64,000 bases of DNA from Hemiscyllium ocellatum (Eukaryota): the NCBI RefSeq assembly GCF_020745735.1, contig NC_083402.1, positions 148,408,527 through 148,472,526 of the forward strand, in the 5' to 3' direction. A program made the translations under genes and the position numbers. How positions within the stretch are numbered: the first letter of the stretch is position 1; every line of letters begins with the position of its first letter. The notes beneath the pieces were generated by a model, which was not told the DNA's origin, did not search any database, and saw nothing but the letters and a program-made list of their open reading frames with translations. Shown here piece by piece: positions 11,791 to 64,000 of the stretch.

Positions 11791-12199
11791 TTCTATACTG
11801 AGCAAAAATAAAATCACAGAGGGTTTAGGAAGATTAGAACGAGACAGCTCTGACAAGAAGAGTTGGTGATGGGACCACTGATCACTAGAGGCTGTCACCA
11901 TTGGAATTGCTGGGAGATGTCATGGGATTTATGGATGTATGGAGGATTGGTGCTCAGGTTCGAAGGTCTGTCCTTGAGACAAGCCGGGGAACAGAACAGG
12001 AGGGTGGAAGGGAGAGATTGGAGGGCTTTGCAATGTGCGACCAAGCATACTCTCTCATCACATCTTATCAAAACTTGCTTATTCATTACCAAGCCTGTCC
12101 CTAAGGCATCTCTCATGTCTTACTATGTGTCAATCCCAAAACAATTCACCACTCAGCAGATATCCCGGACTCCACTGGCATGCCTTATGCCTATTCCAT

Positions 12200-16855: not shown

Positions 16856-17153
16856 TTTAGATTAGATTACTTAGTGTGGAAACAGGCCCTTCGGCCCAAC
16901 AATCCACACGGACCCGCCAAAGCGCAACCCACCCATTCCCCTACGTTTACCCCTTACCTAATACTACGGGCAATTTAGCATGGCCAATTCACCTGACCCG
17001 CACATTTTTGGACTGTGGGAGGAAACCGTAGCACCCGGAGGAAATCCACGCAGACACGGGGAGAACGTGCAAACTCCACACAGTCAGTCAGTCGCCTGAG
17101 TCGGGAATTGAACCCGGGTCTCAGGCGCTGTGAGGCAGCAGTGCTAACCACCG
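16856..17153 (-). mobile_element. HE1-type SINE
   Basis: Reverse complement is nearly identical to 44129-44445. Confidence 0.85.
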
Positions 17154-19612: not shown

Positions 19613-19746
19613 AGCTCTTCAGGAATCCTGAAGGGCTTATGCCTGAAATGTCGAATCTCCTGTTCCTTGGATGCTGCCTGACCTGCTGTGCTTTTCCAGC
19701 AACACTTTCAGCTCTGATCTCCAGCATCTGCAGACCTCACTTTCTC
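19613..19746 (+). mobile_element. Short Penelope-like terminal repeat with short inverted 5' segment
   Basis: 15-bp flanking direct repeat ctgcttgtgttcata (19598-19612, 19747-19761). Confidence 0.72.
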
Positions 19747-20500
19747 CTGCTTGTGTTCATATTTGGGACACTCTTCCTTGGCTACTTTGAGGCGGAAAAG
19801 TTACTCCACTCCGGTACCTTCTGCTTTAACTACTGGAGGTTTAGTTCAAAGCCCTCTCAGATGGTGCTTTAAAAACCAAACACCAATTGGATTTACTCAA
19901 CAGGCTCAGTTCAGGATTGTAACAAGGCCTAAAAAGTGTTACAACCAGGCCCCAGCTGCAAGTTTCAAATTTATATATCTAGATAAAAATGAATATTTCA
20001 GGGCATCTTATTGGGGAGGGGAAAAAAACTGAGCAGAGATGACCCAGCTCCCTTTTATTCTCACCATTTTGTCAGTTACAAAGGTCAAACTTATTTTTTT
20101 TTCCCCTATTTCCCCTTGTTTGACTTCCCGGCTGTTACTGTGCCTAACATTTTCATTAGGGCCAGAGATAGCTAATGGACAGCCTTTGAAGAGTCAGGGG
20201 ATGTTACTGACCTCAGAACTCAGTCTCTGATCTGCTTTTGGAACATTGATATAGTATTGGTGTTCCAGGATTAGTGGTGGGGATTCAGTAGCGGGGATTC
20301 AGTAGCTGATACCACTGAAAATGAAGCAGCAACTGGTTGTTTACAATGTTCATCTTAGTTGTGGCTTTCGTTTCAATCAAAAGCATACTGACTGCATGAA
20401 AAACTCCAGACCAAAGACAGTCACCTTTTCATTGGAATGGGAAAGCTAGAAGTGACATTTGTTGCAACTAACACAGTTGAGACAAGTTTGTAAAATTGCA

Positions 20501-20506
20501 TTTATT
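20501..20506 (-). terminator. Candidate polyadenylation signal AATAAA
   Basis: 18 nt downstream of the stop codon, followed by a U/GU-rich stretch (ctgtgttagttg). Confidence 0.5.
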
Positions 20507-20524: not shown

Positions 20525-20631
20525 TTAATCACCCTCAAAGGCTGGGTTCTCAAAATACATGCTCTGCTGAGTCTTCCTCTTCAGGTCTTGCCATTTCAGG
20601 TAACCAGCAACAACAGCCATGGTCAAGAGTA
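20525..20631 (-). CDS. VLDLR: Terminal exon: rest of TM plus short cytoplasmic tail [35 protein letters not shown]
   Basis: tttcag|TA CTC TTG...; aligns without gaps to VLDLR [32 protein letters not shown]; TAA at 20527-20525. Confidence 0.88.
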
Positions 20632-23600
20632 CTGAAATACAGAAGTGATAAATTAGGCTCCAGTTCAAAAGGAACAGAATAGATTCTCAGTCATATAGCA
20701 TGGAAACAGACCCTCCAATTCAGTTCATCTATGTTAAACAGATATCCTAAAATAGTCCAGTCCCACCTCTAACTTTTTTCATTTAGCCATCCAGATGCCT
20801 TTTAAATCTTGAAGTTGGTCTCTACCACTTTCTCTGGCCACTCATTCCATAGGGAAAAAAGCTACCCCTCAGGTCTCAAATCTTTCCTCTCACATTAACC
20901 TATGCCCTTAGTTTTGAATTCCCTTACGCTGGAGGAGAGAGATATTTACCCTATGTCCCTCATGATTTTATAAACCTCAAGGTCACCCCTTGGTCTCTGA
21001 TGTTCCAGGAAACAGCCTCAACCTATTTAACCTCTCCCTGTAGCTCACATCCTCTACCCTGGCAACATCCTTGGAGATCTTTTCTGAATCCTTTCAAATT
21101 TCACAACATCCTTCTGATTGAGGGAGACCAGAATTTCATACAGTATTCAAATAGTGGCCAAACTAATGTCCTCTAGAGCCACAACATAATCTTCAACATC
21201 TCTACTTAATGCTGACCAATAAAGGAAAGCACACCAAAATACCTTTACTAATCAATCTACCTGCAACTCTACTTCCAAGGAATTATGAATCTTCACTCAG
21301 TCTCTCTTCAGCAAAACTCTCCAGGACTGTACCATTAAGTCCTGCTCTGATTCACCTTTCTAAAGTGCAGCACTTTGCATTTATCCAAATTAAACTCCAT
21401 CTGCCACTTCTCTGCCCATTGGATCAAGATTCCATTGTACTGAGGTAACCTTCACTGTCTACTACACCTTCAACTTTAGTGTCATCTGCAAACTTATAAA
21501 CATACCTATGTTCACATCCAAATCACTGAATGACAAAAAGCAGTGATTCTTGTGGCACATCACTAGTCACAGCCCTCCAGTCTGACAAGGCAACCCTCCA
21601 GCACCACCCTGGCTACCTTTGAGCCAGTTGCATATCCAAATATGATGCAGAGATGCTGGTGTTGGACTCAGGTGGATAAAGTTAAAAATCACAACACCGG
21701 GCTATAGTCTAAGAGGTTTATTCAGGAGTATAGCTTTTGAGAGCTAGTACTTCCAAATATACCTGTTGGGCTGTAGCTTTGATTTTTAACTATCTGAATA
21801 ACTAGTTCTCCCTGTATTCCATAAGATCCAATCTTGTTAACTAGTCCAGCATGAGGACTCTTGAAGACCTTACTGAAGTCCATAAAAGATCACATCCACT
21901 GCTCTGTCTTCAATCTTGTTACTCCAAAGAAGAAAAAAAACAAAAACACCTCTGGTTTGAGGGACAAATTTTCCCCAAAGTCATGTTGGACTATCCTTAA
22001 AATCAGTCCTTGCCAGATTTGTCCTCCAGGTGTTTTGACTTCTATCCTTAAGGCAACTATATGACATTCTAAAGATGAGGAGGCTTGTGTGTTTTCCATT
22101 TAGAAATACTTACAAATGGCAAGTGCAATCCAACCAGCCACAGAGCCATTCTCTGGTTTGTTGACTTTATCAAGTGTAATGCTTGAATCTCTCCCTACAG
22201 AAACAGAATGAAAGCCACATTCCAATTCTTAAATCTAATCCCATTGGGGAAGAAAGCAGCACACGATATTGCTTACATAATGCTAATTGTGGAGTGAGCC
22301 AATTACACTAATTTAGTTAACTATTTGGCTTGATATTACAGGTTGCTTTTTTGCATCAGGAGTTAATCACATTACCTCTAGAAGTCTCAGTATGCTGTTC
22401 AGTTGATGGGTATTTAATGGTACTGGAGGATAAAGTAGACAGTGTTGCTGTAGATAGATGTACATTTGCTGAGAAAAAAGAAGAGAAAAATATTACCTAT
22501 TGCATCTTAAACATGCGATTCTAACTTTTTCAAATCCCTATAGTGCAGGGAGTGGGGACATTTGACCCATTGAGTCTGCACCAACCCTCAAGATCATCCC
22601 ACAGTCCTGAGAAAGTTAGTCATGGAGCACATAGCACAAAGGCCCTCGTTTGTCCAAATTAAACCACTTCATGGAATCACGTGGAAAGACTCAGCTGAGC
22701 AGTCTAATATTGCAGGATGAAACAAGCCAACTGGAGGAGAGTGGAGTGATCAGGATACTACATCCTACTTGACTCAATGGAAGCCAGAGCCAGGCCTGAA
22801 TTTCTGCTCAAAAGCTAGAAATATGTAGACCAGATTCATCCTCCAGGTATTTTGACTTCTATCCTTAAGGCAATCAAAATGGTCATCTTACACATTTGAT
22901 TTCAATATGATGCTGACATTTCAAGTGCTTTAGTTTGCCATAAAAAATTGAAATAAAGCAAGAATCAAGTAAATCAGATCACATCAGAATGATGGTGGAA
23001 ACAGCATCCTTCTGTACTGTTGATAGTTACACTACACATACATTTGAAGACTCAGTTTCCAGATTTAGAGTTTTGAACCTCAACCATTTAAAAAAGAGGA
23101 CATCTTAGAGATTTAAAGGGTGATAGAATTGAGAATTAAGAAAATAAGCCAGAATTCACCTTCAAAAAATGGAGACTAAACTGCACAAATTTGATGGAAA
23201 TCACAACTTCAGATGAATACAAAAAAAAAGTGCAGCAAATTGTACCAATGTCTGAATATAGCTATCCAAGATATGCTGCTCTATTTACAAAACAGTTATC
23301 TGCCTCACCATTTCAATTCAGTGAACTAAAAAAGTTTGTATGTATGGTAGTCGGGAACTAAAAACTCTAGAGTTTTGGTCATTTCAGGCCACTGTGGCCT
23401 GGCAACTCACCCTTGTTATATAGTTTGGGTTCAAGACCAACTGCTCACAAAGGCAGATTGAAGAACTGGTTTCAGGCACTTCTGTAGAGCTGTTTTCATA
23501 TTACATACACAAAACCAGATATAACTAGTCACTGAAATCCACTGATGTTTAACGGTCTCTGCCCAGTGATGTTTATGCTTTGCAGAGTGTCACTCCATGA

Positions 23601-26600
23601 CACTAAGTGTTACCCAAGGATATTACCACCACTTTACATTTTTAATTGTATTGAATTCACTATCCCAATTTCTTGGTGTAGCCTTTACACCATAGTCACT
23701 GTTGCACCAACCATTTGAAGGTGTTTGAGAACAAAGTTGATGATTTCAGATCCTAAATTCCCTCACAACTTTTATTGCCCAATGAAAGTTTTACAAAATT
23801 TAATAGTAGGTACCACATCTCACTGGATGAAGCCTTTCCAGCCTGTTTAACCCAGTTATGAAAAATTCAAATACTTTATCCACTTCATTTTCAGTGGATT
23901 CCCTGTATATTCTAAAGGAGGAATACAAAAAAGCTGGTGCTAGCTATTAAAGATTGATTGAGTTTACCTATTCTACAGTGTTTTCCATTCAGCTCCAGTT
24001 CCTTCCCAGATGGACACACACAGGTATATTTTGGTGACTGACTGTTGAACCAAGGTGCAGGGAGACACATGAAGTCACAGCCGCCATTCTTTAAGCTTTT
24101 ATTACACCAATTTTTACCTAGGAAAAAAGTACAGACCAATTCATGTAGAAATGGAGTCATACTATTTGGATAAAGTAGTGTGAAACCAAGGGAGAGCACA
24201 ATGAAGGTCTATTAATAAAAAGTATGCTGCCCAGAACAATTCAAGTTGGGTTGGCAAGCTACTGCATGATGAAGAAAGTCTTAAAAAGTACAAACTGTCC
24301 ACTGAGTGAGGAGAATTTAAAACCACTTCCACTGCCCAGCAAGGCGAGTTCTAGGAAGAGAAAAAGATGAAGGGGCAGAAACTGAAGTATTTTCCTTAAA
24401 GGAGCACTTTTGTCAACACTAGGGGAGGTGAGAATGAAGTAGTCCTGAAATTTCTGGATTCCAAAAGTATGTTAATAGAGTAATAGAACTAAACAAGTGG
24501 CTGGACGATAAAAAGAATTTGCAAAGACCTGAAACAAGGAGTTGATTTAAGTGTGGGGCTAGGATTTCACTGCAATATAAGAAATAGGAAGAGGTGTAGG
24601 CTGTTCAGTCCCTTCCCCACTAAAGAGCATGGCTGATCCAATATTACTCATCCACTTTCCCAAATCTGCCCATAGCCATCAATTCCATGACTAATCAACA
24701 ACTTACATCATGAAAATACACAAGTTCCCCATAGCTGTGACCAGGACTGTGTAAACACAACCTTCAGATTCCTGAATCTTAAATTGGCATTCCTTTCTTC
24801 AGTGACTATGCCCTCTGGTCCCAGACTGTCCCATGCAGGGGCGGACAAATACCTTTGCCTTCACCAAGGCGGCAGAAACCGCTTGACTGTTTCAATGAGA
24901 AACTAATTCTAAACTCGAGTAGAGTCCCACGTTGTTTAGCTTTTGCTCACAAGACATTCCTTGTATACCAGGGTTCATCTTAAGTAAACTTTCTCTGAAC
25001 TACCTCCAATGAAGTGCTAATTTTAAAAAAAGGGCACCAAACATGCTCAGTACTCCAGATGACAAAGCAGGATCAAGAGGCTGCAATGCCTAACTCTCCA
25101 TCCTCCCCAGAGAGCTTGATTAGATCCATTAAGAAAGAGAGGAGTGCAGATAGGAATTTGTGGGTTGAAATCTATTAATAAAAAAAAACTTACCAGATGG
25201 CTGCAACAGTTTATTATAAACAGTGAGGTCACGTGGCTTATGAAGGTTGGAAGCCAACACCTTCACCTCTTCTCCTGTGAACTTATTGGCTCCATAAATG
25301 GTTTTGCTTGCTGCATCAGTCCAGAAGACATTGTCCTGGAACAAGATCATTTTCAGCATGGAGACATAATCTAGACATCTCAGTACCTTTCCCGAGTGCA
25401 TTTCACTTAAATTAATCTTGATCTGTTCTAAATGATTTTCCAATTTTTTTTCCATAGAAGGAATGAAGATGGTAGCCACAAGAGGCCAGTGTTGGACTGG
25501 GCTGGACAAAAAAAGTCAAAAGTCACTACACCAGATTTAGTCCAATGGTTTATTTGAAAGAAAATCAAATTTTACCTGAAGCAACAGCACTGAAAGCTTG
25601 CAATTTCAAACAAACTTGTTGTACTACAACCTGGTGTTGAGACACTTTGGGTAAAAAGTCAGTGAATTTATAGTATGTTGTTTAAATCCTACAAGGATCA
25701 GTCAGCAAGCCTCCATTTCACTAAGTTGAAATGCCTTTAAATAGAATAATATTGGAAAATGTTAATAAAATGGATGGGAAATAAAGCATTACCTCAAATA
25801 CAGAGACAGCAAAAGGATGAATGAGGAATTCCAATGACCACAACACTGTTCTTCTATCCTGGCCATTCAGACCTACACTTGATATTGTGTGCAACTTTGA
25901 ATCAACCCAATACAAGCAGCTTTTCACAAGATCTGGGGACAAAGTTCAGGTTAAGCTAGTTGTCAATAAAAGCATCTATGCACTTTCAATCCCCAGTAGA
26001 AATATCCTTACCAAGTGCAATGCCATTTGGCCACTGAATCTCTTTGGTCACAAGATGCTGCCGGTCAGCACCATTCATTCCTGCTTTTTCAATCACTGCT
26101 GGTTCACCACAGTCTGACCAGTACATAAACCTTCAAAACAAAAACCGTTTTTAAGGAGCTCAAACTTTGACTATTAAATGAAGTTCAAGCAATGAACTGT
26201 TAATTCTGCAAGGCAGTTGGGAAGCCTCATGCCATACAATTTTCACAGTAAAGATAAAACAGGTTTAGCCAAACAGTTTCCAGCAAGAACAGATTTTGGC
26301 TGAGAACTAGTACATAATTACTAAACTCAAATTTGGGCGATATTCCAGCCAGGCCTGGATTTCTTTTTTCACCATATTCTTAATCTGGCTTCTTTATAAA
26401 TCAGTCCTTCAGTTAGGACAAAATATATAACGTTTTCCAAAATATCTTGTCCCTCACAGCTACAGGTTCAAAGTCACTCTTGGGTGACTGAAGTTTGCAC
26501 ATTCTCCCAGTGTCTGTGTGGGTTTCCTCCAGGCGCAGTTTCCTCCCACACAGTCAGCCAGAGATATGCTGGCTGGCTGGATTGGCCATGCTAAAATATC

Positions 26601-29600
26601 CTTATTGTCCAGGGATCATAGACTAGGTGGATCAACCATAGGAAATGCAGGATTACAAAGATAGGGGTGAAGGGGTGGGTTTGGGTAGAATACTGTTCAG
26701 ATTGACTGAATTCCATGGGCCAAAGTGGCCTGTTCCCACATTGTAAAGATTGTAGGATTTAAGATTTGGGATATGTTTGGGAGTAATTTCTCTTTCCACT
26801 CTCCATTGATTACAATAGTCAAAAGGGCAAAAGGCTGGATAAGCAGCTTTAGAATTTACAAGTCCACATGATCATGACAATTCTGTTCAGGAGACAGACA
26901 TATTCACAAGCTACACATTAAAGAGAGTACAAAGACCAGTACCCAGTAATTGGATCAACTGCAACAGAAGTTGGTTCCCTTAATTCAGTGTCAAAGAGTG
27001 TCTTCCTTTTAGTTCCATCGAATGTGGCCACAGATATGGACTTTGAACCCCAATCAGTCCAATAGATATGCTTGTAGATCCAATCCACTGCAATTCCTGC
27101 TGGAACATCCACATCTTCAATTTTGGTAATCACAGACGATTGTTCCCCTTCATTCATGGACATACTGGAAGAGAGTTACTGGTTTAGACTCCAATTGTAT
27201 TAAAAGGGGAAAAACAACTTTGAATTGTCTCATTAAACTCAAGGCATGGCACACTTGGAGTGCATGGTGTCTTAAAAGACATGACTAACTGACCTACTTT
27301 GGTGGCCTCTGAAAGCAAAAGTTATTCAGGGCAGTGGATAAACTCCTACTCTTTAATGCCACAATGTTGGTGCCCAAACAGAAAAAGACTGAGTTTTAAC
27401 TGATTCTGAACAGCAGCACAGCACCCCAGTAAAAGCTAAGATGTATTCAAGTCCTGACAGTTGGATTTGATGTTTATTAGTGGAGTCAAGCTGGTAACTA
27501 TATCGATGTTCCCAATTTGTACAAAATCAGTGCATTAAGTTATTTGCAGTCATGTAAGAGTCACAGGGTGAAGGCAGCATTTTACATACTGACATTCAGG
27601 ATCAAAACATGTGTTTGAGTTAGGAGGTTTTGTGGTTGTATAGTGTGCTGGTGAAGCTACTTTTAGAATATCAAATACAATTCTGGTATCCTATAGGAAA
27701 GTTGTTAAACTACAGGATGCACTCAAGGCCTAAGGATGTTCCTGGGCCTGGAGAGTTGGAGTCTAAGAAAAGGCTAGGCCACCTTCCATGGAGTACCAGA
27801 GGCTGAAGGGTGACCTCAGGAGAGAGACACGCACACAGCATAGAACAAACTGCCAGTGGAAGGGTGTGGTGGGTACAACTGCAAAATTTAAAAGACATGG
27901 AGTGCTATACAAATAGCCAGAGTGGAGGATGTGCCAACATTTGACCCATGGGACTAAGTCAGATTTGGATGTTCGGTCAGCCAGTATCCTGCTCCTCAGA
28001 TGCTGCCTGACCTGCTGTGCTTTTCTATACCACACAACTGATCTCCAACATCTGCAGTCCTCACTTTCTCGTGATGTTTGGATGAGTTTGACAAAAAAAA
28101 GAGACTGTCTGTGCTGTATGACTGAGTCCATATTTCTCATGGAAAGCACAGTTTTATCCTTAAACTCAGCCCAGTCTGATCAGTAAACCCCAGGCTATTT
28201 AGTAAAAGGAAAACACTGGTGTTACATTCCACGTCTAGTTTTGTTGCTGTAGATCCGAGATAGAGGAAGAAGTGATTTTAAAAAAAAGCTTGCTAGACAA
28301 ACTCCGCAAGTCTGGAAACATCTATGTTGAGAAAGCAGAGTCAATATAGAGAATGTCCTGAAGGGTCACTGGACTCAGTTGACTCTGTCCAGACCTGCTG
28401 AGATGCTCCAACCATGTTTTCAGATTTCCAGCATCTACAGTTTAGTTTTTAAACTAGCTTGTCGTAGGAGATGTGTTTTGAACTGCTGTTTGGCATACTG
28501 CATCTCAAACAAGTTTCTTGACTAGTGCCTGAAGACAACTACGTTTCAAATAAGTTTAAAAAAAAACACATTTGCAACAAGTAACCAGCCTTTTACATAT
28601 AATTGCCCAAAAGTAACAAAATGTTTGATACTCTGCAATGCAGAATAAGTTCAAGGCGACAAGTTACCTAAGAATTGCGTGCTGGCTTGATTCAGTCCAG
28701 AAAATTCTGTCTTCAGCAATATCAACATCCAGTGCTACAGCATTTCTCAACTGCATGGCAACCTGGGTGTACTCATAACGATGCAGTCCTAGTTTCCGGA
28801 TGTCGTGCTGATTTGTGAAGATCAAATAAGGTTCCTCTCCTGTGCCGGGTTTGCAATAGCAAAGTGAATAATCCACAATTTTAAACACAATCACAACAGG
28901 CCTTTTTATTTACTGCCAGGAAATCTAGTTTTTCTCAAAAATCAGTAAAATCTTAAAAATGGTCTCTACAAACCTAAATTAGAGTGATGTTGAATATTAT
29001 AGATCCTATGAAACCATATCCTTTACTCCATCACATTGAACAAATTTATAGCTAATAGGTTATCCCCATCTGGCCTGCAGCCACTTAGCCATTTGGAGGG
29101 TTTCATTTATTGCCAATGAATGTTCCCAACTTATTTATTCTTGCTGTTCAGAAGTAAAACACATTCATGCAGCTCGTTTTAAACAATTCTACTGCAAGGA
29201 TGATCTGTTGCACATTTGATTCTTAAACACCCAGTAATGATTTAGTTTCACTGTCTTCAGGAAAACATTCATTTGCAAACAGCAAAAGTAGATACATCCC
29301 TGCTACCATTAAACTGTAGCATGAAATATTTGATTTTCTCCCCCTAAAGGATTTATTGATTTTTGTTGCAAGTATCCTGATTACAATGCTTACTTGATGT
29401 TAAACATGAACACAGAGGAAGTTATCCAAAGATGGTGGTGGGAGAAACAACTTTTACAGTCGAGCAGGAGACAGTGAAGATATGGAAATCACTGCAGTGC
29501 ATTGGTGTTCTGTAGACACTTAAAAATTTATAATTAGATTCTTCTTTAAGGGCTGTGGGTATTAACTGCAAGGTCAGCATTTGTTGTCTAACTTGAGTGG

Positions 29601-32600
29601 AGTGGCCATTTCAGAAAGTAATTAACAATCAGCTCCATTTGTTGTGGGTCAGTAGACAGGACATAGCAAGGATGTAGATTTCCTTGTTATTTTGGTCTGC
29701 ATATCGATCACCCTTTTCTATCCGATTTAGATAATGAAACAAATTGATTACATCTTAGAAGCTCCAGCAGCAAGTTAGCTAGGAGCTGGATTAGTAAGAT
29801 CTCAGTTAAGGATCAGAGGGATTATAGTCACGTTCATTTCAAATTCCACCGAGAACACTCCTCTCAAAAATCAGTCCCTCCAACTGAAGACTAATTACAG
29901 GAGATGAGAGTGTGATCCAGAGCAGGCCAAGAAACAGTGGATGATCAGAGACAGGCATTTTAAAACATTTCAGTGTCCAAAAGATGGCTGGGGTAGGGGG
30001 CAGCAGTGAAATGCACCAAAATTTACTCAAAGGCAGACTTAACTGGAGGGGGGGGCTGTGTGATCTTGTGCATGAGACTGCATGAAGATACAGGGGGTAA
30101 TTAGAGGTGGCAAACAGAACAGGGACTTTAACTAGGGAACCAGTTTAAAATAATTGTAACTGTTAAAGAAAATTTGCAGAGTTTGAGACCAACAATTCTT
30201 TTAAGAGCAAATTGTGCCGAGTCTTACCTATTGCCTTGCAAATGGAATTAGTCAGGTCCATGTGATATCCAGGATGGCATTCACACTTGTAACTTCCTTC
30301 CAAGTTCACACAAATCTGGCTGCACGTTCCAGAATTTTGACATTCATCAACGTCTAAAAGTAAACCAACACATTTAAATTCATGAAGCTTTCATTCAAAA
30401 GCAGTTGACAAAAACCATTATAGCACAAGCAGTTCCAACTTGCCTTCACAGGTTCGATCAACCAATCGAAAGCCAACAGGACAGTCACATTCATATCCAA
30501 TGACAAGATCATGACAGAGATGAGAACAACCTCCATTATTGAGCAAGCATTCATTCACATCTAAAACAAAAACAAAGATTTAGTACTTCACTCCTCAGGA
30601 TCACTCAGTCCAAATGCTGCTATCATTCTTGCTCCTGCTAAAGAAAAAAAGGATACACTGAGGACTGATGTGTTGTAACTGACTATTTGATTCTTTTGGT
30701 TCCTGCATCCAATATGGACATTTACACATTGAGAATTGTACATTGACAAAAAAAAAAAACTGAGTATGGAAGATACTAGACATCTACAATATCAGGGAAT
30801 GCTCAAAACAGTTCTCACAGCATCTGGAGATGCAATTCTTAGATTTTTCTGTTATGAGACTTTCGTTAACAAAGACCATAATGACAAATTGTGGACCCTT
30901 TGAACAACAACTTTCTACTGAACTGGTATTACATTTTTTTTTAAATGCTGATCTTGAACAGATCAACTTTCTAAGCACAGGACTGCAGAGGAACAGTGTT
31001 ACATTACAGCAGACCAACCTGCAGATGCTGAGTATTGTCACCATATTAAAAATATAATACAAATGCAAAGTGGATTCCCAGATCAAAAGTAACCAGAATA
31101 AAATGTTCATTTGATAGATGCTCAATTCAATTAAAAATCATTGAAGAGTGTGTAGTGATTGAGAAGTATCATATATGCCCTGAAATTGGTAGGAACTTAT
31201 AGTAGGAACAGAGTATCTAATATCCTTTGAACATCTGTATTTCCTCTTCTGGCCCATCACCCAGCCAAATATTAGTTCACATCAGCTACTGCAACTTTCA
31301 TATCCATGTTCTGAATAGGAGAATTTGAACTTTCAAACTGGATGTAATATTTTGGATACTGCCATTTGGCTTGAAATAAATTAATTCAATCATATTCCAT
31401 AATATAGGTCTTCTACAATCTGCTTTCTGGTCAGATGCAGAATATGCTGCTCCAAAAAGCAATTCAAACATGCTTCCAATGAAAGGCCATCACCAATCTG
31501 ATTGCCATTCCTTTAATCAAATTGCAAATAACTTCAAAAAAAAGGACCTAATATATTCTTCATCCATGACGACTGTTCGGAGAGTTGCAAATTCCTGGTC
31601 AGTGAGATCTTTCCCAATCATCCCTTCTCTCCACCCAACAAATTCTACATCCTGATCTCCTGAATGAGGAAGTACACAGACTGTTGCAATAATTATGCTT
31701 ATTTACTTTATACTTACATCCTTCTACTTTAGTTTTGGAAGGGTAGAGTGCAGTTTTGGACCCTGTATCCAAGGAAGGCAATGTTGGTGTTGAGGGGGGG
31801 GGGGGGGGGGGGGGGGTCCAGGGATGATTCACAAGAATCAGAGGATAGAGGGCTAGTCACACAAAAGGGGCAGCTGAGGACTCTTTCAATCAATGGAGTG
31901 GAGACAAACTTGGAATTACAGGGAGGCCTGGATCAAGTAGATGTGACAACGCTTCCATTAAGAGAGAATAGGATCCAAGGGTATAGCCTCTAACTGGACC
32001 TTTTTGAACCAAGAGGAATTTCTTCAGCCAGATTGCAATTAGTTTTACAAATTTACCACAGTGAAGGGCTGTGGAGGCCAAGTCACCGAGTTTATCCACG
32101 AGATAGATTCTTGATAACTAAGGGGATTAAGGGTTACAGAGAAGGCAGGTGGTGAAATGGGAATTGAGAAACAATAGGAGCTAGGGCCCTGAGCCAAATG
32201 GCCCAATTATGTTCCTCTTATGGTCTTGCTATTCTCAGATGTCATACACCTCAATATACAAAGCCCAATCCTTGTCAGCGAGAAATCTGCAGGATCAATA
32301 TTTATTCACATGACCACAGCTCATTTACATTAGTACCATTTGTATTTAGATGGAGACCTTACAAAATAGGATTAGGCCATTCAGTACTAATCGCTGATTA
32401 GTAGCCTAACTCCATATGCTTACCTTTTCAGTTTTAGGGATGTGGGCCAAAGACATTTTATTTCAGATTTTAGCATTAAAACAGATTTAGCATCCATTGT
32501 TTTGTAGGAGGGTGTTCCAAACCTCTTCCATTGTGTGAGAAAGTGTTTCCCAACATCTCTCCTGAATGGTCTGGCCCTCATTCTCCCTAGTTCTAGGATC

Positions 32601-35600
32601 CCCAATGGAAATAGTTTATTTACCCCATCTTCTCCTGTTAATCTCTTTAGGCACTAACCCAATCATCCTGGAAGCTAAACTAAGAGAAGAGAAAACAAGC
32701 CTAATCAATAGACATTCCTCACAATTTAAACCTTCAAGTCCAGATACACTACAATGACAACAAATGTGTCTTGACTGATATATTCAATTGTCCCTTCTTC
32801 CCATTCTCACCTTTGTTTTCCATACTATGTCTTGCTGTATGCCTTAATCCATTTCTTTAACAATCCCTTACCCCTCCCGTAAGGAGCTGTACTTCCCTAG
32901 CGGTGTTTCAAAACACCAGTCCTAGCATAATGCAGGCTGTTGACCACCCCAATATTACAGATCCCACTCTCCCCAGTCCTGAAGAGTCGAGACTAAGTAC
33001 TCTCCAGATTTTGTTAGACCTGTGGAAGTATTTCTGCAAAGTGTGTTCATATTCCCAGTGCTAGTGTCAATGCCTCAAGTAACAGATCCAAACTCCTGCC
33101 AAACCAATCTTTGAACCACATTCATTATATTCACCCTTTACCAATTTGCACAAGATTTAGGTAGCAGCCCAGAGATTGCCACTTTAAAAACGGCTTTAAA
33201 ATTTAGCATTTTGCTTCTCAGAACTCTCCTCATTCCTGTTTGAGGAATATGAACATGGCCACAGAACCCTCCCTTGCCACTGCAAATTTTTCCAACTAAA
33301 AAACACCCCAAGAGGTCTGTAGGGACTCTGCTGCAGAGAATCAGCCACTTTTCCCACCAATCTCACTCCACTATTTCCTATTGCCCAATCTATTGGCACA
33401 CTCATTCACGGGATAAGCATTACTGGTTGGACCAGCATTTATTTCCCATCCCTAGTTATCCTCAAGTGATAGCGAGCTGCCTTCTTGAACTGTTGCAGTC
33501 CATTCAGTATAGACCCATCTACTATGCCATTCAGGAGGAAGGGGATGGTGTTAGGTTTGGAGGGCAATTTGCAAGTGTTGTTTCCAATATTTGACACTTT
33601 TCCCACTTGTAGATGGTAGCAGTCATTTACCAAAACTCCATTTATATAGCATCATTTTGATGGTACACACTCTGTGGAGGGGAACTGAGGGTTTATGGAT
33701 ATGGGCAGGTTGCTTTGTGCTGAACGGTAAGTGCTATTGGAGCCTGTGCTTATCCAGATCAATGGGAAATATACCCACTGATATGGAGGGGCAACTTTTG
33801 GAAATGGAACTGGTCTGACTAAAGATCAGAATACAGACAGACTAACGTCACATCTTCAAATGCATTGTCTGAGCAGAGATGTCACTCTTTAAAATCAAAT
33901 CTCAAGTTACCTTGGGAATGTGACTTGGTAGTTCTGGGATTTACATCAAAAGCTGCAACCCCATTCTAAAAGATGAATGGGGTAACTGCAATCTAGGTTT
34001 GTTCAATGTATCACAATTGTGTGACATGATAATGTTTTGCTTTAAATTCTGTGTCCTATGATCCTACCCTCCCATCTACCTGAAGCAGTGCTCTGAAAGC
34101 TTGTACTTAGATCTGTTGGACACTAACCTGGTGTCATGTGATTTATAATCCAGCATTGTAGATTGTATATATTTTGGGAGCCAGGAAGTGAGCTTCCTTC
34201 TGCCAGCATTGATATGGCTACACTAGTTCAGTCAACAGCAACTCCCTGGAATGGCAGCCAGTTAAAATCAATGCTCCTCACTTCATCTAGACAAGAAAAT
34301 CAGCTCTTTAAAATTGCACAATTGTTCAACTGCCAATTAATACATTGCTTTAACTAGTACCATGCAGCATTAAGGCCGACTTGTAAAGTTAGCCTGGTCT
34401 TACCAGACCATAGGGCTGCTCGGAGATGACCCAGGGTGGTTTAACCAGAGGGTCACCACCCCTCAGAGGGAAGGAGTGGAGTAGGATCCTGCATAGTAAC
34501 CTCAGCCAGTGCTGGAATTGAACCCATGCTGTTGGCATCATTTAGCACAGCAAACATGATCCAGCAAAAGTATCTCTGTCCTGGTGAACAAGGAATTTAT
34601 TGGTGCATTCCTTCAGTAATTAGGGATCACTTCTCCCATAGCATCTATCTGGCTCAGTTATTTTAAGATTAAAATGTTACTAATTGGAAATAAACCCCAT
34701 TGCACATGGGACTGCAGTGGCAAATACCTTGATTTTTGCAACAGTATCCATTGGAATGATGTTTTTAAAGAGTCTGAGCACAAACAGCTTTGGGTCTGAC
34801 CAGCCTATCCTGAAATGTGCACTAAGCTAGTCCCACCTCCCCTGCACTTGTGACACAAAGTTAGTCCCTTTTGTCCCTTAAAGGCTGTTACTTGGCTCAA
34901 GGAGACTGTCGAGGAGAAAAAGTGAGGACTGCAGATGCTGGAGATCAGAGCTGAAAATGTGTTGCTGGAAGAGAGCAGGTCAGGCAGCATCCAAGGAGGA
35001 GTCCGAAGAAGGGCTCATGCCTGAAATGTTGATTCTCCTGCTCCTTTGATGCTGCCTGACCTGCGCTTTTCCAGCAACACATTTTCAGCTCAAGGAGCCT
35101 GTCCTTGATTTTTTCAAAAAAAAGGGATAATAAACGAGGCTGGGCTCCAATCAATCTGGTTTGGTACAAAGATGAAAGGGATATGGAGAGGCCTTTTGTT
35201 TATGTAAAAGATGAGACTTCAGGCCAAAGTGGTCATATTTTCGAAGTGACCTGTATAATGAAAGGGGAGTGGTTAGCTCTCTAGCTAGCTGAGCAGTTTT
35301 AGTCCAGTCTTGAATTGATTGACTGTTCAGCAGGGAGCTGTATGAAAGCACTTTCTGCCCTTCAACTTCAACCTGTAAGCATAGGTTTTATTTATACTGG
35401 GACTGAGACATCTATTCAGAACAGCATAATTAAATCTAGCCGGATAGGTGGAGTTCTGTATCCTGTTCTTTGTTTTGTTGCATGTTTTTGTGAACTAGTT
35501 GGTTTAAAATCAAGTAGACAACCTAGCTAACTCAATCTAGGTAATTTTCACTGCACACTTACCAAAACAAAATTACAAAGTCGTAGTTGGCACTGCCTGC

Positions 35601-38600
35601 TTAAGAATGTTGAGTGGTCTAGTCTATAATATTTGGCCCATATCCCTCCAAACCTTTCATATTCATGGACTAATCCAACTATCTTTTCAACATTGTAAAT
35701 GCATCCACTACTTCCTCCATTTATTCCACAGGTCAACCACTAGGAGTTTTGTTCTTTTTAAAAATCTCATCTTAAATATATGTCCTCATTTTGCACTTCC
35801 ATACTTTAAGAGCAGACCTTGGTCATTCACCTTAGTTATGCCTCACTACTTTATAAATGTAAAAAAAGTCACCCCCCTCAACCTCCTATGCTCTAGTGAG
35901 AAGAAGGTTCCAGTCTATTTTTATTGTTGAAACCATCAATTCCTGACAACATCCTGGTAAAATCTTTTCCAAACCCTCACGAGTTAATATCCTTCCTATA
36001 ACAGGGTAACTAGAACTGCACAGTACTCCAGAACAGGCTGCCTCAATCTCCTGAGGCATTAATGATTATCATACTGAAATTTTCATGTTAGTGCTACACA
36101 GTTCTACCTTTGTGGATTGCCTAATTGCTCTAGCTCAATTATAGGCAACTAATTTCAGATAAAGGTAAACAGCATATTGTTCTTTTGCCTTAATAGATTA
36201 CATCAAGGAGTTAATTGCTCTTATTGGTGTACAGCTTAAATCTATTGTTTATTCAGTAATTGACAGCACAATTCTCCTGGATTACATATTACTAATTTTA
36301 TATTACAGGATGTTTGTAAACAAAGAAGAAAGTGAGGACTGCAGATGCTGGAGATCAAAGCTTAAAAGTGTGTTGCTGGAAAAGCACAGCAAGTCAGGCA
36401 GCAAAGGAACAGGAGAATTGATGTTTCGGGCATAGTCCTTTTTCAGGAATGAGGGTGCGCCAAGTGGGCTAAGATAAAAAGGTAGGGAGGAGGGATGTTG
36501 GGAATACGATGGTGGAATTTTTGAAAAGGGAGTAGCATGAAAAGCAGTTAGGAAGCAAATTTAATTTATTTAAAATGAACATTGCTTAACTAAACAAACA
36601 TGGGGACTTTTTTTTAAAAAAAAAAGAAACGTGTGCATGCTGGCTACCCCCAAATGATTAAACAGTTAGACCACACCATTCAGCCCTTCAAACCTGCTCC
36701 AGTGGATCCACAGATACATTAGGAGTTTTAGTGTTACACCATTCCAACTATCCCCCATAAAGCAGCCTGAAATCTCTATTTCCTTTGAAAATGCACAACC
36801 ATCCCAAACTCAAATCCTGAGGCAAAGTCCACTGCTGGCCATTGTGGGATTTGAACATTATGGATCAGTAGATTACCAGTCTGTCAGTTAGCCCACGAAG
36901 GCACACCAAAAAAAAAAGATTTTGTAAATCAGAAATAAAGCCAGAATTTGCCAGGAAAGCTCAGGTCTGGCAGCATGTGAAGAGAAACCAACATTAATGT
37001 TTGGAGGAAAGATCACTAGATTCAAAACATTAACTGATTGCTCTCCAGATGCTGCCAGATTTGCTGCGCTTTTTTTTTAGCAAATTGTGGTTTTACTTCC
37101 AAGGGCAGTTAAGAGTCAATGTATGGGTCAGGAGTCACATGAATTCCAGAAACATTAGTGGGACTGACACAGAACGAAGAGACAGCCTTAGGACTGAGGT
37201 GGAAAATTTCTTCAGAGTGAGTCTGTAGAATTTGCTACCACAGAACACAGTCAGGGTTAAATCATAGAATTTCAGGGAGGAGTTGATATAGCACTTGGGG
37301 GCTAAAGGGATGAAAAATAGATTGGAGGTGGGAAGAAACATGCTGAGTTAGATCTTAAAGCCACAAATCATGAAACGAGGCTGAAAGGCCCAGTCCTGCT
37401 CCTTTTTCCAGGAGCCTGGGATCCCTGTAGAGACAGGTCTGTCATCGCAGGATGAGCTACATAAATCAGGAGCCAAAAACAGTTAACTTTTATAACTGTT
37501 GCTATCAAGTAATAAACTACACTGACAAAGCAAGTGCCTTTTTAAAAGTATAGCAGTGGTCTCCCACCTGATTAGCCACACAGGATATCAACATCAGCAT
37601 CAAGGAGGAAGAATGAATGAACAGAATATCAACAACAGCACGGGGGTGGGGGAGATCATTTGAAGGCACTATGACACCAGCCCCACCTCAGGGCTATGAG
37701 GCCTGGGTTCAAATCCCAGCTGCTCCAAAAACATTTTTAAAAAAAGGAATATTAGGGGCTTGAGATAGCGGTAGTGTCCCTACCTCCAGGCAGAAGGCCC
37801 AGGCTCAAGTCCCACTACAATCCCAAATTGATTGATAATAAATTGAAAAAAAAGGAGAGAAGTTATGGCAGCTAGCGATCCCAAAACGTTCCCAGCAGGC
37901 AGTTCCCAGAGTGCACTAGAACATGGTTCAAGTCTGACATGCCAAACTCAAGTGCAAGAGGCTTAGGAAAGATTAGAGCCACAAGTCATACAAATATTGT
38001 AGGAGCATATTAACAAGTGGGTGTACTTAGAGTTAAAGCAGCAGAACTACTGGATACAACAGCAAGTGCTCAATAAAGGCAACACTTGGTCAAACAACTC
38101 AATTAGCTCATTGCCTGGAGACAAAAATTAGAATTCGACCAGTTTAAAATTATACCCTAAGAACAATTCAAACTCCAGTTGAGTTTGTATAGAGTATATT
38201 GACAATCTTAAAAGCCAATGACACAATCCAATGCATTGGAGGTATGAAACCAGTGAAAATTGAATAGTTAAGAGAACTGACAAGCCCAAAAGTAAACAGA
38301 CCGCCTGAAAATAGCTCTTAAATACTTTTTCAATCAGTAACCTGAGACAAAGATCCCTAACACACAGGAAGATCCAAATAGAAGAATGAAAGCTGCCTGG
38401 TTGAGATTAGTTTTGTTTTATAAATCTTAATGGAGGGTTTTTAAACCAGATTAAAAAAAAGATAACAGATAGGTTAGAGTAAGGAATAGTAAAGAGTTAA
38501 TTATTTGTTATACTTTTAACAAAGTAGTTAATTTTTACTTTAAATAGTCCTTGGCCACTTGAAGTTTTATAGATTACTGCACTGGATAAATCTTTGTTTG

Positions 38601-41600
38601 CTGGTTTTAAATTAAGCAAGAAGGTTTAACCTGGTGTTGTCAAAGGAGTTAAAAAGTGGACTTAAAGGAATAAAATTTCAGAAAGTTTGCTGGAAAAGCT
38701 CTGCAGGTGTGGCAGCACTGGAGGAGAGAGAGTGATCAGAGTTAATGCTTCAGGTCCAGTGACTCTTCCTAGGTTTGATATTTTCACCAACTGCAGTTCT
38801 TTGTTTATTGAAAAAAATGTTTGAAGTTAGTTGAGCTTTTAGTCCCAAAACACTTACTGCATTTTCCAATGAGTTCATCACTCCAATCCTTGCAATCCTG
38901 CTGCTGATTACAGACTTGTGATACATTAATACATTCACCACTTTGACACTTGAAATCCATGGGTCCTGTGCACTCAGCAACTGTCAAAAAAAGTTAAAGC
39001 ATGAAATTGATACTTGTACAAGTATCAGTGATATTCTAAAAATACAGTTACAAGAGTGTATTCACCTTTCTTGCAGCTGTTTTCGTCACTTCTATCTGGG
39101 CAATCACCAATTCCATTACACTGTCTGTGTCCTGGGATACAGCTACCATCACTGCATCTGAAGTGATCAGGTCCACATGTTGGAGGTGCTAACAAAAAAA
39201 CGTTAATGTAATTAAGAAGTTGGTTTGGGCGTGTTGTGAAAACAGGTGTGCCTACAAATTCTTTCAGAACACTTCTAAAGTGCAATTCATGTTGTAAACA
39301 TTGTGCTGTTTTCAGTCTGAACAGTTAGCAATATACAAAATTGACTAGCAAATTGTAAAGATGCACTTATGCAGATTTTGTACTATTTAATACTAATTTT
39401 GTAGCAGTATCTAGTTTCTAAACCACTAGAATTTAAAAAACCTCAAATGCTAGAAATGTGTGAAAATTGCAAAGGTTTGAGTTAATTTAAAGATTCATTG
39501 GATATGGGCATCACTGGCCAGGCCAGCATTTGTTGCCCAGAGGGCAGGAGGGAGTCAGCCACATTACTGTGGGTCTGGAGTCACATGTAGGCCAGACCAG
39601 GCAAATAAGAGGCAAATCAGATGGGTTTCCCTTTCAAATTAACCAGACTATTTCCAGATACTATTGAATTCAGATTCCACAATCTGTGGTCGGATTTGAA
39701 CACAGGTTCCCAGGACATTTGCTAGGTTGCTGGATTCTTGGCCTAGTGATTTCACCTCTGCATGAGAAGGAAAAACCTTTTAAATGGCATACATTTGCAG
39801 TCAATAGCATTATTCACTTGACTAATTCCTTCATCCATTCTACTGGTTGAGACTACATTCACTCAACATATCAGTGCTCAGCAAAATTTAGTCTGGTCAA
39901 AAAAAAGTGGCCAGAGCATATCCAAAAAACAACCAAAGATACAAAACAGTAAAAAAAAACAGTAATGGCCGGCCAGAGGACTGGCAATTTTACTGGAGCA
40001 AGAACCTTAAAATGTTAGTAAATTGGAAAGAAATTTAAAGAGCTTCAGAATAAATAAAAGCAGCTAAAGGAGTGTGGGACTTCCAGAGGAGGCAATGAAA
40101 GACTGAGAACACAATGTGGCAGATAATTTAACCCCATATTTTGCTTTCATTTTCATGAAAGACAACAGTAAACATCCCAAAGTTCAGAAGAGCAAGGTGC
40201 TAATAGAAAATTTGCCAAATTGCTGTCACTTAACAGCAAGCTTAAAACTAGGGGACATGACACTGAATGAGCACCCCTTTACCATGCAATGTATACACTC
40301 CGAGAGGGTAGTGAATGCCTGGAATTCTATATCCCCACAGCATAGTGATAGACCATTGAAGTATTTCCAAAGTGGTAGATCAATTAGAGAGAGTAGCTGC
40401 AGACTGAGAAAGGGAGCAGTGCGAAAAGGAATGGGAGTGCTGCCCGAGGATCTTAATCTAAGTTATCTTGTTGCAGTCTGAGGGGGAAAAAATCCCAATG
40501 ATTTACCTCCTGTATACTCACTTCAGGTATCCCTAAGAGTTGCATCTACATGGCATCTTTCAACTTTTGAAAGCAATGCCAATTTTCACAAATACTGATA
40601 CTAAGCTATTTTAAAACAAAAATCCACTTGCAGTAATTCTACCTCAGTCTAGTATTGGAAGAGACCAATGGGTAAAAAATGAGGTCTGCAGATGCTGGAG
40701 ATCACAGCTGCAAATGTGTTGCTGGTCAAAGCACAGCAGGTTAGGCAGCATCTCAGGAATAGAGAATTCGACGTTTCGAGCATAAGCCCTTCATCAGGAA
40801 TAATGATGAAGGGCTTATGCTCGAAACGTCGAATTCTCTATTCCTGAGATGCTGCCTAACCTGCTGTGCTTTGACCAGCAACACATTTGCAGCTTGGAAG
40901 AGACCAACATTGCTTTGGTCTGAAAATCAAACCAATTTTCCTGGCAACAGTCTGAAGGTTGACCTGGACTCAAACAGAGAAAGGCCACTAATTGTGATCT
41001 TCTCACTAAACTCCATTATACTTCATGAATGAAATATCTCTAGCTTCATTTGTCAGACCTCCAGCACAGGAAAAAAGCCCTTTGGCTCAGTTTGTGCTGG
41101 TCAAAAGTCTAATTGTTCTAATTCCACTTCCCAACACTTGGCCTATAGCCTTGGCATCACAAACACATCTAAATACTCAGTGTTGGAGGTTTCTGCCTCT
41201 TCCACCATTAGAGGTGGCAAGTTGTAGATTCTCACTACCCTTTGGTGAAAAAGCTTTTCCTCTTTAAACCTTCTGCCCTTTACCTCAAGTAGGTCCCTGG
41301 TCACAGATCCTTCCAGCAAGGGTTAAAAACTTTCTACCCAGCTACCTGACCTATGCCCCTCAACTTCTACACATCCCAAAACACTTCATTTTCTGCAAAA
41401 ATGGTAATTTAATACCAGGGATTTGAGAATATTCCAAATATGTAGATGGGTGAAGTGTTGATAACCATTGCATCACTGCAAATTAACATGCTGGTGCTGC
41501 ATTTTCTGTAGATAAAGATAAATTCCATCATACACATTGCATGTAGATCCCAATTGGGCAGCCAATCTGTCCCTTGATTCAGTCATTCTGAGACAGTGGA

Positions 41601-63629: not shown

Positions 63630-64000
63630 CTGGGAGGAAAGAACTTAGACTTTAGCCCTCATCTAAAATAGATGTTTGATTTGAATGAGCTGAGGTTTGA
63701 CCATTAAATTACAAAAACTAAGCTGACATTTTGCATTACTGAGCTAAACTATTGTAATGAAAACAGTTAAGATCTATTTAGATTTTTCAAATTCAACCCA
63801 ACCAGACAAGTTTGACAACTGAAGCTGGTAGGACCAGATACTGGGCTCAAGGTTGGAGTATTCGACTACATTTTTATCCTAAAGGAAATGCCCCAAGTCA
63901 ACACAGGGCTGATTAGAGTTGAAATGTTTTAGATTATGAATCTAGTAACTAAAAACAGATGAGGATAGGGGAAAGAGATCAATATGAGATTAACTAGTGA

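What the first reader, a model, noticed from the sequence alone, without database searches (positions are those of the whole stretch)
20525..20631. Cytoplasmic tail cut to 23 aa with FxNPxY changed to FENPAF
Seen: the tail is [23 protein letters not shown]. Established: VLDLR has a ~54-aa tail with FDNPVY, which binds PTB adaptors (Dab1, Dab2, ARH). IDOL recognises a WxxKNxxS(I/M)xF motif and ubiquitinates a lysine downstream of NPVY. Here Y is replaced by F, the W and N of the IDOL motif are L and T, and everything after the motif (including that lysine and the final exon) is gone. Inference: an endocytosis-focused receptor possibly uncoupled from Reelin/Dab1 signalling and IDOL degradation.
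Basis: partly seen in the sequence, partly recalled or inferred. Interest (0 to 1): 0.72.

Follow-up and report, generated by a model that had tools for sequence, protein, structure and literature searches.

The report
Shark yolk-receptor gene's short tail
This is the true end of a giant shark egg-yolk-receptor-type gene (VLDLRc3): its inner tail has been only 23 amino acids long, with the uptake signal spelled NPxF instead of NPxY, in sharks, rays and chimaeras alike, so the oddity is real and ancient, but it sits in a gene family named in 2023.

Summary
On the minus strand, exon 20631-20525 encodes the end of the membrane span and the tail [23 protein letters not shown], then TAA.

The gene is the 3' third of VLDLRc3. 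This is a cartilaginous-fish-only, ovary-expressed tandem duplicate of VLDLR with a repeated outer part (Ohishi 2023, PMC10015161). That paper never mentions the tail.

The short tail is neither a local accident nor a splicing artefact:
- All 14 c2/c3 tails I recovered, from sharks, rays and a chimaera, read FENP[A/V/L]F. Twelve stop exactly 3 residues later.
- All 9 cartilaginous-fish VLDLRc1 tails keep FDNPVY plus 36 more residues.
- On a tree the short tail needs one change.
- In shark, sevengill shark and skate DNA the stop sits at the same codon, followed by an invariant AAGGCAAATAAA 12-21 nt later.
- No distal-tail exon lies downstream.

Likely function (inferred): a minimal coated-pit uptake signal. 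LDLR with FDNPVF keeps 95% of its internalisation. Arthropod yolk receptors carry FxNPxF.

Loss of IDOL control is plausible. Loss of Dab binding is unsupported.

Other notes of this scan cover the same window's outer part, not other DNA.

The finding is a new detail in a known family, of moderate interest.

The parts
20525..20631 (-). Last coding exon of VLDLRc3: C-terminal half of the membrane span, the 23-aa tail and the stop
   Evidence: Acceptor tatttcag| lies at 20639-20632, with a phase-1 join to 22114. The exon is 83-91% identical to the whale shark and bamboo shark c3 C-termini.
20528..20596 (-). Cytoplasmic tail [23 protein letters not shown] (23 aa)
   Evidence: Translation. It aligns without gaps to the VLDLR juxtamembrane segment.
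20537..20554 (-). FENPAF, the FxNPxY-equivalent motif with Phe at position 0
   Evidence: F, E, N, P and F are invariant in 14 of 14 c2/c3 tails. All c1, VLDLR, LDLR and LRP8 tails read FDNPVY.
20552..20584 (-). [11 protein letters not shown], the equivalent of the IDOL recognition motif WxxKNxxS(I/M)xF
   Evidence: W->L here, in Chiloscyllium and in Callorhinchus only. N->T in all elasmobranch c3; the chimaera gene has S there. K, S, M and F are kept. Motif as quoted in bioRxiv 2022.11.15.516687.
20525..20527 (-). Stop codon TAA, three codons after the motif
   Evidence: The stop sits at the same codon in Heptranchias (TGA) and Amblyraja (TGA) DNA. It sits at the same position in 12 of 14 predicted or cDNA proteins.
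20501..20506 (-). AATAAA poly(A) signal, 21 nt after the stop, inside the conserved AAGGCAAATAAA
   Evidence: The 12-mer is invariant in shark, sevengill shark and skate.
20465..20476 (-). GT-rich stretch CTGTGTTAGTTG, a candidate downstream element of the poly(A) site
   Evidence: It aligns with GGTGTTTAATTAC in Heptranchias and GGTGTTTACTTGC in Amblyraja. Similarity fades after it.
22114..22194 (-). Preceding exon: end of the stalk and start of the membrane span ([27 protein letters not shown])
   Evidence: Flanked by AG and GT, and in frame with its neighbours.
22376..22468 (-). Ser/Thr-rich stalk (O-linked-sugar-type) exon
23968..24117 (-). EGF-C exon of the last ectodomain unit
24118..63630 (-). 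Upstream exons of the same gene: EGF-A/B, YWTD propeller and EGF-C of the fourth unit, then 7 LA repeats and EGF-A/B plus propeller of the fifth unit
   Evidence: Collinear tblastn to whale shark c3 residues 2314-3398. Pfam Ldl_recept_a and Ldl_recept_b hits.

Best explanation
Exon 20631-20525 is the true terminal coding exon of the VLDLRc3 orthologue of a hemiscylliid shark. VLDLRc3 is a cartilaginous-fish-specific tandem duplicate of VLDLR with a multiplied outer part.

In the common ancestor of VLDLRc2 and VLDLRc3, before chimaeras split from sharks and rays, three things happened:
- The tail was cut three residues after the coated-pit motif.
- The motif changed from FDNPVY to FENPxF.
- A poly(A) signal came to lie right behind the new stop.

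All of this has been kept since (shown).

What is left is the VLDLR juxtamembrane segment in its original register plus FxNPxF. I infer that this works as a minimal, non-phosphorylatable signal for constitutive clathrin-mediated uptake, and probably for recycling, of yolk precursors in the oocyte. Candidate readers are PTB adaptors of the ARH/Dab2 type and SNX17.

The distal 36 residues of VLDLR were dispensable there. They carry the lysine used by IDOL and the LDLR-type distal sorting signal.
For: Identity of the gene:
- Collinear match to whale shark c3 residues 2314-3489.
- The window's last unit falls inside the c3 clade, next to Chiloscyllium (SH-aLRT 100).
- The family is defined in PMC10015161.

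Real terminus:
- The spliced frame is open.
- The stop is at the same codon, and AAGGCAAATAAA is invariant 12-21 nt later, in three species spanning sharks and skates.
- No distal-tail-like exon lies downstream.

Conservation:
- 14 of 14 c2/c3 tails read FENP[AVL]F, and 12 of 14 stop 3 residues later.
- 9 of 9 c1 tails keep FDNPVY plus 36 residues.
- The short-tail state needs one change on a tree built without the tail columns.

Function (indirect):
- LDLR FDNPVF has an internalisation index of 0.95 (PMC2133019 Table I).
- FXNPXF is conserved in tick and insect yolk receptors.
- The SNX17 FERM domain binds NPx(F/Y).
- Catshark c2/c3 are expressed only in ovary.
Against: - No transcript from this species was seen. 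A search for transcript-derived protein fragments found nothing.
- Most orthologue tails come from gene predictions, which stop at the first in-frame stop by construction.
- The candidate donor GAGG|GTGATT scores like a real donor.
- Tolerance of Y->F depends on context. A Jedi-1 NPXF mutant loses engulfment (PMC4055271). The LDLR proximal basolateral signal does not tolerate Phe (PMC2120116).
- No binding or uptake data exist for any c2/c3 protein. Vitellogenin binding is itself only proposed (PMC10015161).
Confidence: 0.72

Rival explanations
1. The stop is bypassed. The donor GAG G|gtgatt, just before TAA, is used in some or most transcripts and adds a longer, canonical tail from a downstream exon.
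For: On a rough donor matrix this site scores 6.0 bits. That is within the range of this gene's real donors (5.5-6.4) and in the top 5% of GTs on the strand.
Against: - The GT is absent in Heptranchias (CAGTATGATT). In Amblyraja it has a poor -1 base (AAC|GT).
- The stop codon position and a poly(A) signal right behind it are conserved.
- The three residues after the motif keep a pattern, [Q/E]-x-[D/N/E].
- tblastn with c1, LDLR and LRP8 distal tails finds nothing above chance on the minus strand below 20525.
- The 20 kb downstream is retroelement debris.
Confidence: 0.05
2. The tail no longer drives uptake by itself. NPxF is a weakened signal, and the giant receptor acts as a surface trap or works only together with VLDLRc1 or another partner that carries the real signal.
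For: - Y->F kills function in some NPxY receptors (Jedi-1).
- The tail lacks the LL/LI motif that accompanies FXNPXF in arthropod yolk receptors.
- c1 is also expressed in catshark ovary.
Against: - Five motif residues are invariant across two paralogues and all major cartilaginous-fish lineages. This argues that something reads the motif.
- In the closest tested relative, LDLR, FDNPVF is 95% as good as FDNPVY.
- The spacing from the membrane is unchanged.
Confidence: 0.15
3. The main selected effect is escape from regulation. Phe prevents tyrosine phosphorylation, and loss of the downstream lysine together with N->T prevents IDOL-driven degradation. Together these keep receptor levels high in the oocyte.
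For: - No Lys follows the motif in any c3 or batoid c2 tail. Only the shark c2 tails, which run 6-9 residues past the motif, have one.
- N->T holds in all elasmobranch c3; the chimaera gene has S at that position.
- Phe never reverts to Tyr in the 14 tails, although one base change would do it.
- The IDOL motif is as quoted.
Against: - Most c3 tails keep 5 of the 6 IDOL motif residues, including W.
- Three juxtamembrane lysines remain.
- There are no data on IDOL in sharks.
- This reading is compatible with the main explanation rather than opposed to it.
Confidence: 0.3
4. It is a decaying or mis-assembled gene end, that is, a pseudogene.
For: None beyond the unusual shortness.
Against: - The spliced frame is open.
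- All exons are collinear with whale shark c3.
- The tail is conserved over the whole class.
- The orthologue is expressed in ovary.
Confidence: 0.01

Closest known systems
VLDLRc3 / VLDLRc2 of cartilaginous fishes (Ohishi et al. 2023, Genome Biol Evol, PMC10015161)
   Same: This is the orthologue. It has the same repeated ectodomain units, falls in the same clade, and ends with the same tail as the cDNA-based catshark c3 entry (FENPAFECD*).
   Different: Nothing structural differs. The paper describes the ectodomain repeats, the tandem origin and the ovary expression. It does not mention the cytoplasmic tail, NPxY or the early stop: these words occur 0 times in it.
VLDLR (= VLDLRc1, LR8, vertebrate vitellogenin receptor)
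   Same: It is the parent gene. The exon layout at the 3' end is the same: the membrane span is split by an intron. The juxtamembrane register is identical up to the motif.
   Different: VLDLR has FDNPVY plus 36 nearly invariant further residues, 54 aa in all, and one ectodomain unit. Here the motif is FENPAF plus 3 residues, 23 aa in all, and c3 has five units according to PMC10015161; this window holds only the last two.
Engineered LDLR tail mutants (Davis et al. 1987, as tabulated in Kibbey et al. 1998, PMC2133019)
   Same: FDNPVF internalises at 0.95 of wild type. From memory and not re-read here, a tail cut to about 22 residues still internalises. The shark tail is a natural equivalent of both changes combined.
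   Different: Those are laboratory constructs in human LDLR. Here the state is natural and has been fixed throughout the cartilaginous fishes, in both c2 and c3.
Arthropod vitellogenin receptors (tick, insect)
   Same: They are ovary receptors of the LDLR family with more than one ligand-binding cluster and a conserved FXNPXF motif, NPAF in Bemisia.
   Different: Their origin is independent, because the shark genes nest inside vertebrate VLDLR. The arthropod tails are longer and also carry LL/LI signals, which are absent here.
SNX17 cargo motifs NPx(F/Y)
   Same: FENPAF fits the stated preference of the SNX17 FERM domain.
   Different: No binding was tested. This is a lead only.

Membership tests
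VLDLRc3 (chondrichthyan VLDLR paralogue) | Groups with named c3 sequences rather than with c1, c2, VLDLR, LRP8 or LDLR | tested here: met
   The window's last unit lies inside the c3 clade (SH-aLRT 100) and is sister to Chiloscyllium c3 (100). Per-exon identity to whale shark c3 is 59-97% and collinear.
VLDLRc3 (chondrichthyan VLDLR paralogue) | Several repeated VLDLR-type ectodomain units in one gene (five in c3) | tested here: inconclusive
   The window holds the EGF-precursor part of one unit, followed directly by a full second unit (7 LA + EGF-A/B + propeller + EGF-C) in one collinear gene. The first three units lie beyond the window's end.
VLDLRc3 (chondrichthyan VLDLR paralogue) | Ovary-restricted expression | not testable with these tools
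   Reported for catshark only (PMC10015161).
Canonical LDLR/VLDLR/ApoER2 endocytic tail | FxNPxY with Tyr at position 0 | tested here: not met
   The motif is FENPAF. Phe is at position 0 in all 14 c2/c3 tails.
Canonical LDLR/VLDLR/ApoER2 endocytic tail | Distal tail of about 33-38 residues after the motif, encoded by the rest of this exon plus a final exon | tested here: not met
   The stop comes 3 codons after the motif and the poly(A) signal 21 nt later. No distal-tail match lies downstream.
IDOL (MYLIP) substrates | WxxKNxxS(I/M)xF next to the membrane | tested here: not met
   The sequence here is [11 protein letters not shown], which matches 4 of 6 fixed positions. Most c3 tails match 5 of 6, with W kept and N->T.
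IDOL (MYLIP) substrates | Acceptor lysine (or cysteine) downstream of NPVY | tested here: not met
   Only E-G-D follows the motif. The requirement itself is recalled from the literature and was not re-read here.
Arthropod vitellogenin receptors | FXNPXF in the tail | tested here: met
   FENPAF. Motif as given in PMC6537121.
Arthropod vitellogenin receptors | LL/LI signal in the tail, and common descent with arthropod VgR | tested here: not met
   There is no LL or LI in the 23-aa tail. The gene nests within vertebrate VLDLR. The likeness is convergent, not membership.

The most novel reading that the evidence does not exclude
Oocyte yolk receptors have converged twice on the same design, once in arthropods and once in cartilaginous fishes: a multiplied ligand-binding ectodomain plus a non-phosphorylatable FxNPxF signal. 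This would mean that Phe rather than Tyr is specifically favoured for very high-flux, unregulated uptake and recycling in oocytes. Possible reasons are escape from tyrosine kinases and from IDOL-type turnover. The shark tail, at 23 residues, would then be the smallest natural tail that suffices.
Probability: 0.3. Interest if true: 0.6.

Novelty: new variant of a known kind. Interest (0 to 1): 0.42.

Why it matters
The LDLR-family tail is a textbook case of a sorting signal, and its minimal requirements were worked out with artificial mutants. Here nature has kept the minimal version across all cartilaginous fishes, in two giant ovary-expressed receptors: about 20 residues, with Phe in place of Tyr. 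The sister gene VLDLRc1, in the same genomes, keeps the full 54-residue tail almost unchanged.

That gives a clean natural contrast for asking what the distal tail, the tyrosine hydroxyl and the IDOL degron are for. It also adds a missing piece to the 2023 description of VLDLRc2/c3 as candidate shark yolk receptors.

The finding does not open a new kind of biology. The gene is known, and the function is inferred by analogy.

Tried and rejected
- **Teleost Lrp13:** I first suspected an Lrp13 orthologue. Lrp13 has 7-13 LA repeats plus one C-terminal LA repeat and about 1,234 aa (PMC9935665), which is a different layout. The sequence and tree place this gene in VLDLRc3 instead. I could not find what the Lrp13 tail looks like.
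- **Two tandem genes in the window:** rejected. The exons are collinear with one whale shark protein across the EGF-C to LA junction.
- **Transcript evidence:** a search for short protein fragments matching the last 159 residues of bamboo shark c3 found nothing. So I have no RNA-level proof for this species.
- **Orthologue DNA:** it could be fetched for Heptranchias and Amblyraja only. Whale shark and sawfish were not on record, and the bamboo shark, Mustelus and Hypanus genes or files were too large.
- **PDB search with the tail:** no hit.
- **Dab1 PTB paper (PMC84361):** not held. Tolerance of Dab-type PTB domains for Phe is therefore left open.
- **Other NPxF-only tails:** those among the search representatives are sea urchin, brachiopod and unnamed proteins, not arthropod yolk receptors. 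The arthropod comparison therefore rests on the literature.
- **Donor scoring:** my position weights are from memory and rough.

Full report
**What is in the sequence**

The feature lies on the minus strand. An acceptor (tatttcag|) ends at 20632, and the exon runs 20631-20525. With one base from the previous exon (22194-22114...GCC ATT T|gtaagt) it reads [35 protein letters not shown], then TAA.

The last four exons have GT-AG borders and splice into a single open frame. They are 24117-23968, 22468-22376, 22194-22114 and 20631-20525. The frame runs from the EGF-C module through a Ser/Thr-rich stalk and a membrane span of about 20 residues into a 23-residue tail.

- Tail: 20596-20528.
- FENPAF: 20554-20537.
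- Stop: 20527-20525.

**Which gene it is**

The window's minus strand carries LDLR class A and class B (YWTD) modules. A full-library search with one YWTD exon gave as best hit a bamboo shark protein with the same C-terminus.

Name look-ups and a region search showed the relatives to be "very low density lipoprotein receptor c3" and "c2" of the cloudy catshark. Their RefSeq counterparts in sharks, rays and a chimaera carry various automatic LRP1/2/4-like names.

The window's exons are collinear with residues 2314-3489 of the 3489-residue whale shark c3 protein. This includes the junction where an EGF-C exon is followed directly by an LA exon. So the window holds the last third of one gene, not two tandem genes.

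A stitched translation of the last unit falls inside the c3 clade, next to Chiloscyllium (SH-aLRT 100). Earlier notes of this scan call the genome epaulette shark, which fits.

VLDLRc2 and c3 were defined by Ohishi et al. 2023 (PMC10015161). They are tandem duplicates of VLDLR found only in cartilaginous fishes. They have three and five repeats of the VLDLR outer part, and in the catshark they are expressed only in ovary. That paper does not contain the words cytoplasmic, tail or NPxY.

**Is the short tail real and conserved?**

I collected 14 c2/c3-type tails and 9 VLDLRc1 tails from cartilaginous fishes. I added VLDLR, LDLR and LRP8 from other vertebrates.

- Every c1 tail reads ...[19 protein letters not shown] followed by 36 nearly invariant residues, as in mammals.
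- Every c2/c3 tail reads FENP[A/V/L]F.
- Twelve of the 14 end exactly three residues later. The endings are ECD, EHD, QSD, QRD, QYD, QNE and QSN.
- The two shark c2 tails run 6 and 9 residues past the motif.

A tree of the last ectodomain unit, built without the tail columns, puts c2, c3 and the chimaera gene in one clade (SH-aLRT 97-99). That clade lies inside the chondrichthyan VLDLR branch. The short-tail state needs a single change. The truncation and the Tyr-to-Phe change therefore date to before the split of chimaeras from sharks and rays.

**Is the stop used, or spliced around?**

On a rough donor matrix (weights from memory) this site scores 6.0 bits. That is no worse than the gene's real donors at 5.5-6.4 bits, so the score does not dismiss it. 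Comparison with other species does.

I fetched the orthologous DNA of a sevengill shark (L001) and the thorny skate (L002) and aligned the last exon and its flank.

- The stop is at the same codon in all three: TAA, TGA, TGA.
- The GT of the proposed donor is missing in the sevengill shark (CAGTATGATT).
- The 12-mer AAGGCAAATAAA, which contains a poly(A) signal, is invariant 12-21 nt after the stop.
- A GT-rich stretch follows it, and similarity then fades.

This is the signature of a conserved mRNA end with a very short 3' untranslated region, which I estimate at roughly 40-55 nt.

A relaxed tblastn with the distal tails of c1, LDLR and LRP8 finds nothing above chance on the minus strand downstream of the stop. 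That region is filled with retroelement fragments.

The catshark c3 entry comes from a study that sequenced VLDLR cDNAs by RT-PCR, although the primers were designed on predicted genes. I found no transcript-derived fragments myself. RNA-level proof for this species is therefore still missing.

**How it most likely works**

Shown:
- The tail keeps the VLDLR juxtamembrane segment in register, with no gaps up to the motif.
- It keeps five invariant motif residues.
- It has lost everything after position +3.

Inferred: it is a minimal coated-pit signal. The evidence is indirect.

- In human LDLR the peptide and receptor variant FDNPVF has an internalisation index of 0.95 relative to FDNPVY. Leu, Ser and Ala give 0.2-0.3 (Kibbey et al. 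1998, Table I, citing Davis et al. 1987).
- From memory, the same 1987 work found that a tail cut to about 22 residues still internalises. I could not re-read it.
- Tick and insect yolk receptors, which also have more than one ligand-binding cluster, carry a conserved FXNPXF, NPAF in Bemisia.
- The SNX17 FERM domain, which recycles NPxY cargo, accepts NPx(F/Y).

With ovary-only expression of the catshark orthologues, the simplest reading is constitutive uptake and recycling of yolk precursors in the oocyte.

Points against:
- Tolerance of Phe is not universal. A Jedi-1 NPXF mutant is inactive.
- The LDLR proximal basolateral signal does not accept Phe.
- No c2/c3 protein has been tested for anything.

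IDOL motif: the motif WxxKNxxS(I/M)xF is quoted. Here it reads [11 protein letters not shown], which matches 4 of 6 positions. Most c3 tails keep the Trp ([11 protein letters not shown], 5 of 6). Trp-to-Leu is therefore special to hemiscylliid sharks and the chimaera. Asn-to-Thr holds in all elasmobranch c3 tails. The absence of any lysine after the motif holds in c3 and in batoid c2. Weakened IDOL control is thus plausible but not established.

Dab1: uncoupling from Dab1 has no support. Phe removes the phosphorylation site, not necessarily binding by PTB domains that prefer unphosphorylated ligands. I could not obtain the primary paper.

One observation does hint at selection for Phe itself. 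Phe never reverts to Tyr in 14 tails from two paralogues, although a single base change would do it.

**Comparison with what is known, and novelty**

The gene is a member of a named family (VLDLRc3). Its sequences are public under mixed automatic names. The tail's state is not described in the defining paper.

In function it resembles engineered minimal LDLR tails and, by convergence, arthropod yolk receptors. It is not a member of the latter, because it nests within vertebrate VLDLR and lacks their LL/LI signals. It fails the canonical FxNPxY, distal-tail and IDOL-degron definitions.

I rate it a new variant of a known kind, of moderate interest. It is a tidy natural experiment rather than a surprise.

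**Limits**

- Most tails are gene predictions.
- The donor matrix and the 22-residue truncation result are from memory.
- The trees are quick searches with SH-aLRT support only.
- The stitched window protein contained two stops where alignments ran across a short intron. These were treated as gaps.

Noticed in passing
L001 1-32405 (Heptranchias) and L002 1-55881 (Amblyraja): In both genomes the public annotation splits VLDLRc3 into two adjacent genes: 1900 + 1065 aa, and 1471 + 2154 aa, with gaps of only about 400-1850 bp. The bamboo shark model GCC23412.1 (1768 aa) skips several exons that are present in this window. c3 gene models are unreliable.
   Followed up: partly
window 46532-46693 and 45805-45927 (minus strand): The EGF-C exon of one ectodomain unit is followed after about 600 bp by the first LA exon of the next unit. 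There is no membrane span or signal-peptide exon between them. This matches whale shark c3 residues 2662-2762, so the units are fused in one reading frame.
   Followed up: partly
window 1-20000: The 20 kb downstream of the gene holds no recognisable gene, only retroelement pieces. One ORF at 938-1315 (-) matches the reverse transcriptase family RVT_1 (E 7e-15). ORFs at 8505-9134 (+) and 14519-15055 (+) share a similar C-terminal LINE-like sequence but have no Pfam hit.
   Followed up: partly
window 57830-59260 (minus strand, inside an intron): Several overlapping long Pro/Ser-rich open frames (160-187 aa) have no Pfam match. Together with a GC-rich, strongly skewed stretch at 48000-49350, they look like unclassified repeats inside introns.
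   Followed up: no
window 20268-20306: A 14-bp tandem repeat (GGATTCAGTAGCGG, 2.9 copies) lies about 220 bp beyond the stop codon, outside the conserved 3' end.
   Followed up: no
proteins P0157 and P0158 (shark VLDLRc2): Shark c2 tails run 6-9 residues past the motif (QHKSTE, QHKISDETK). Batoid c2 tails stop after QSN. The stop codon has therefore shifted in one lineage while FENPxF stayed fixed.
   Followed up: no
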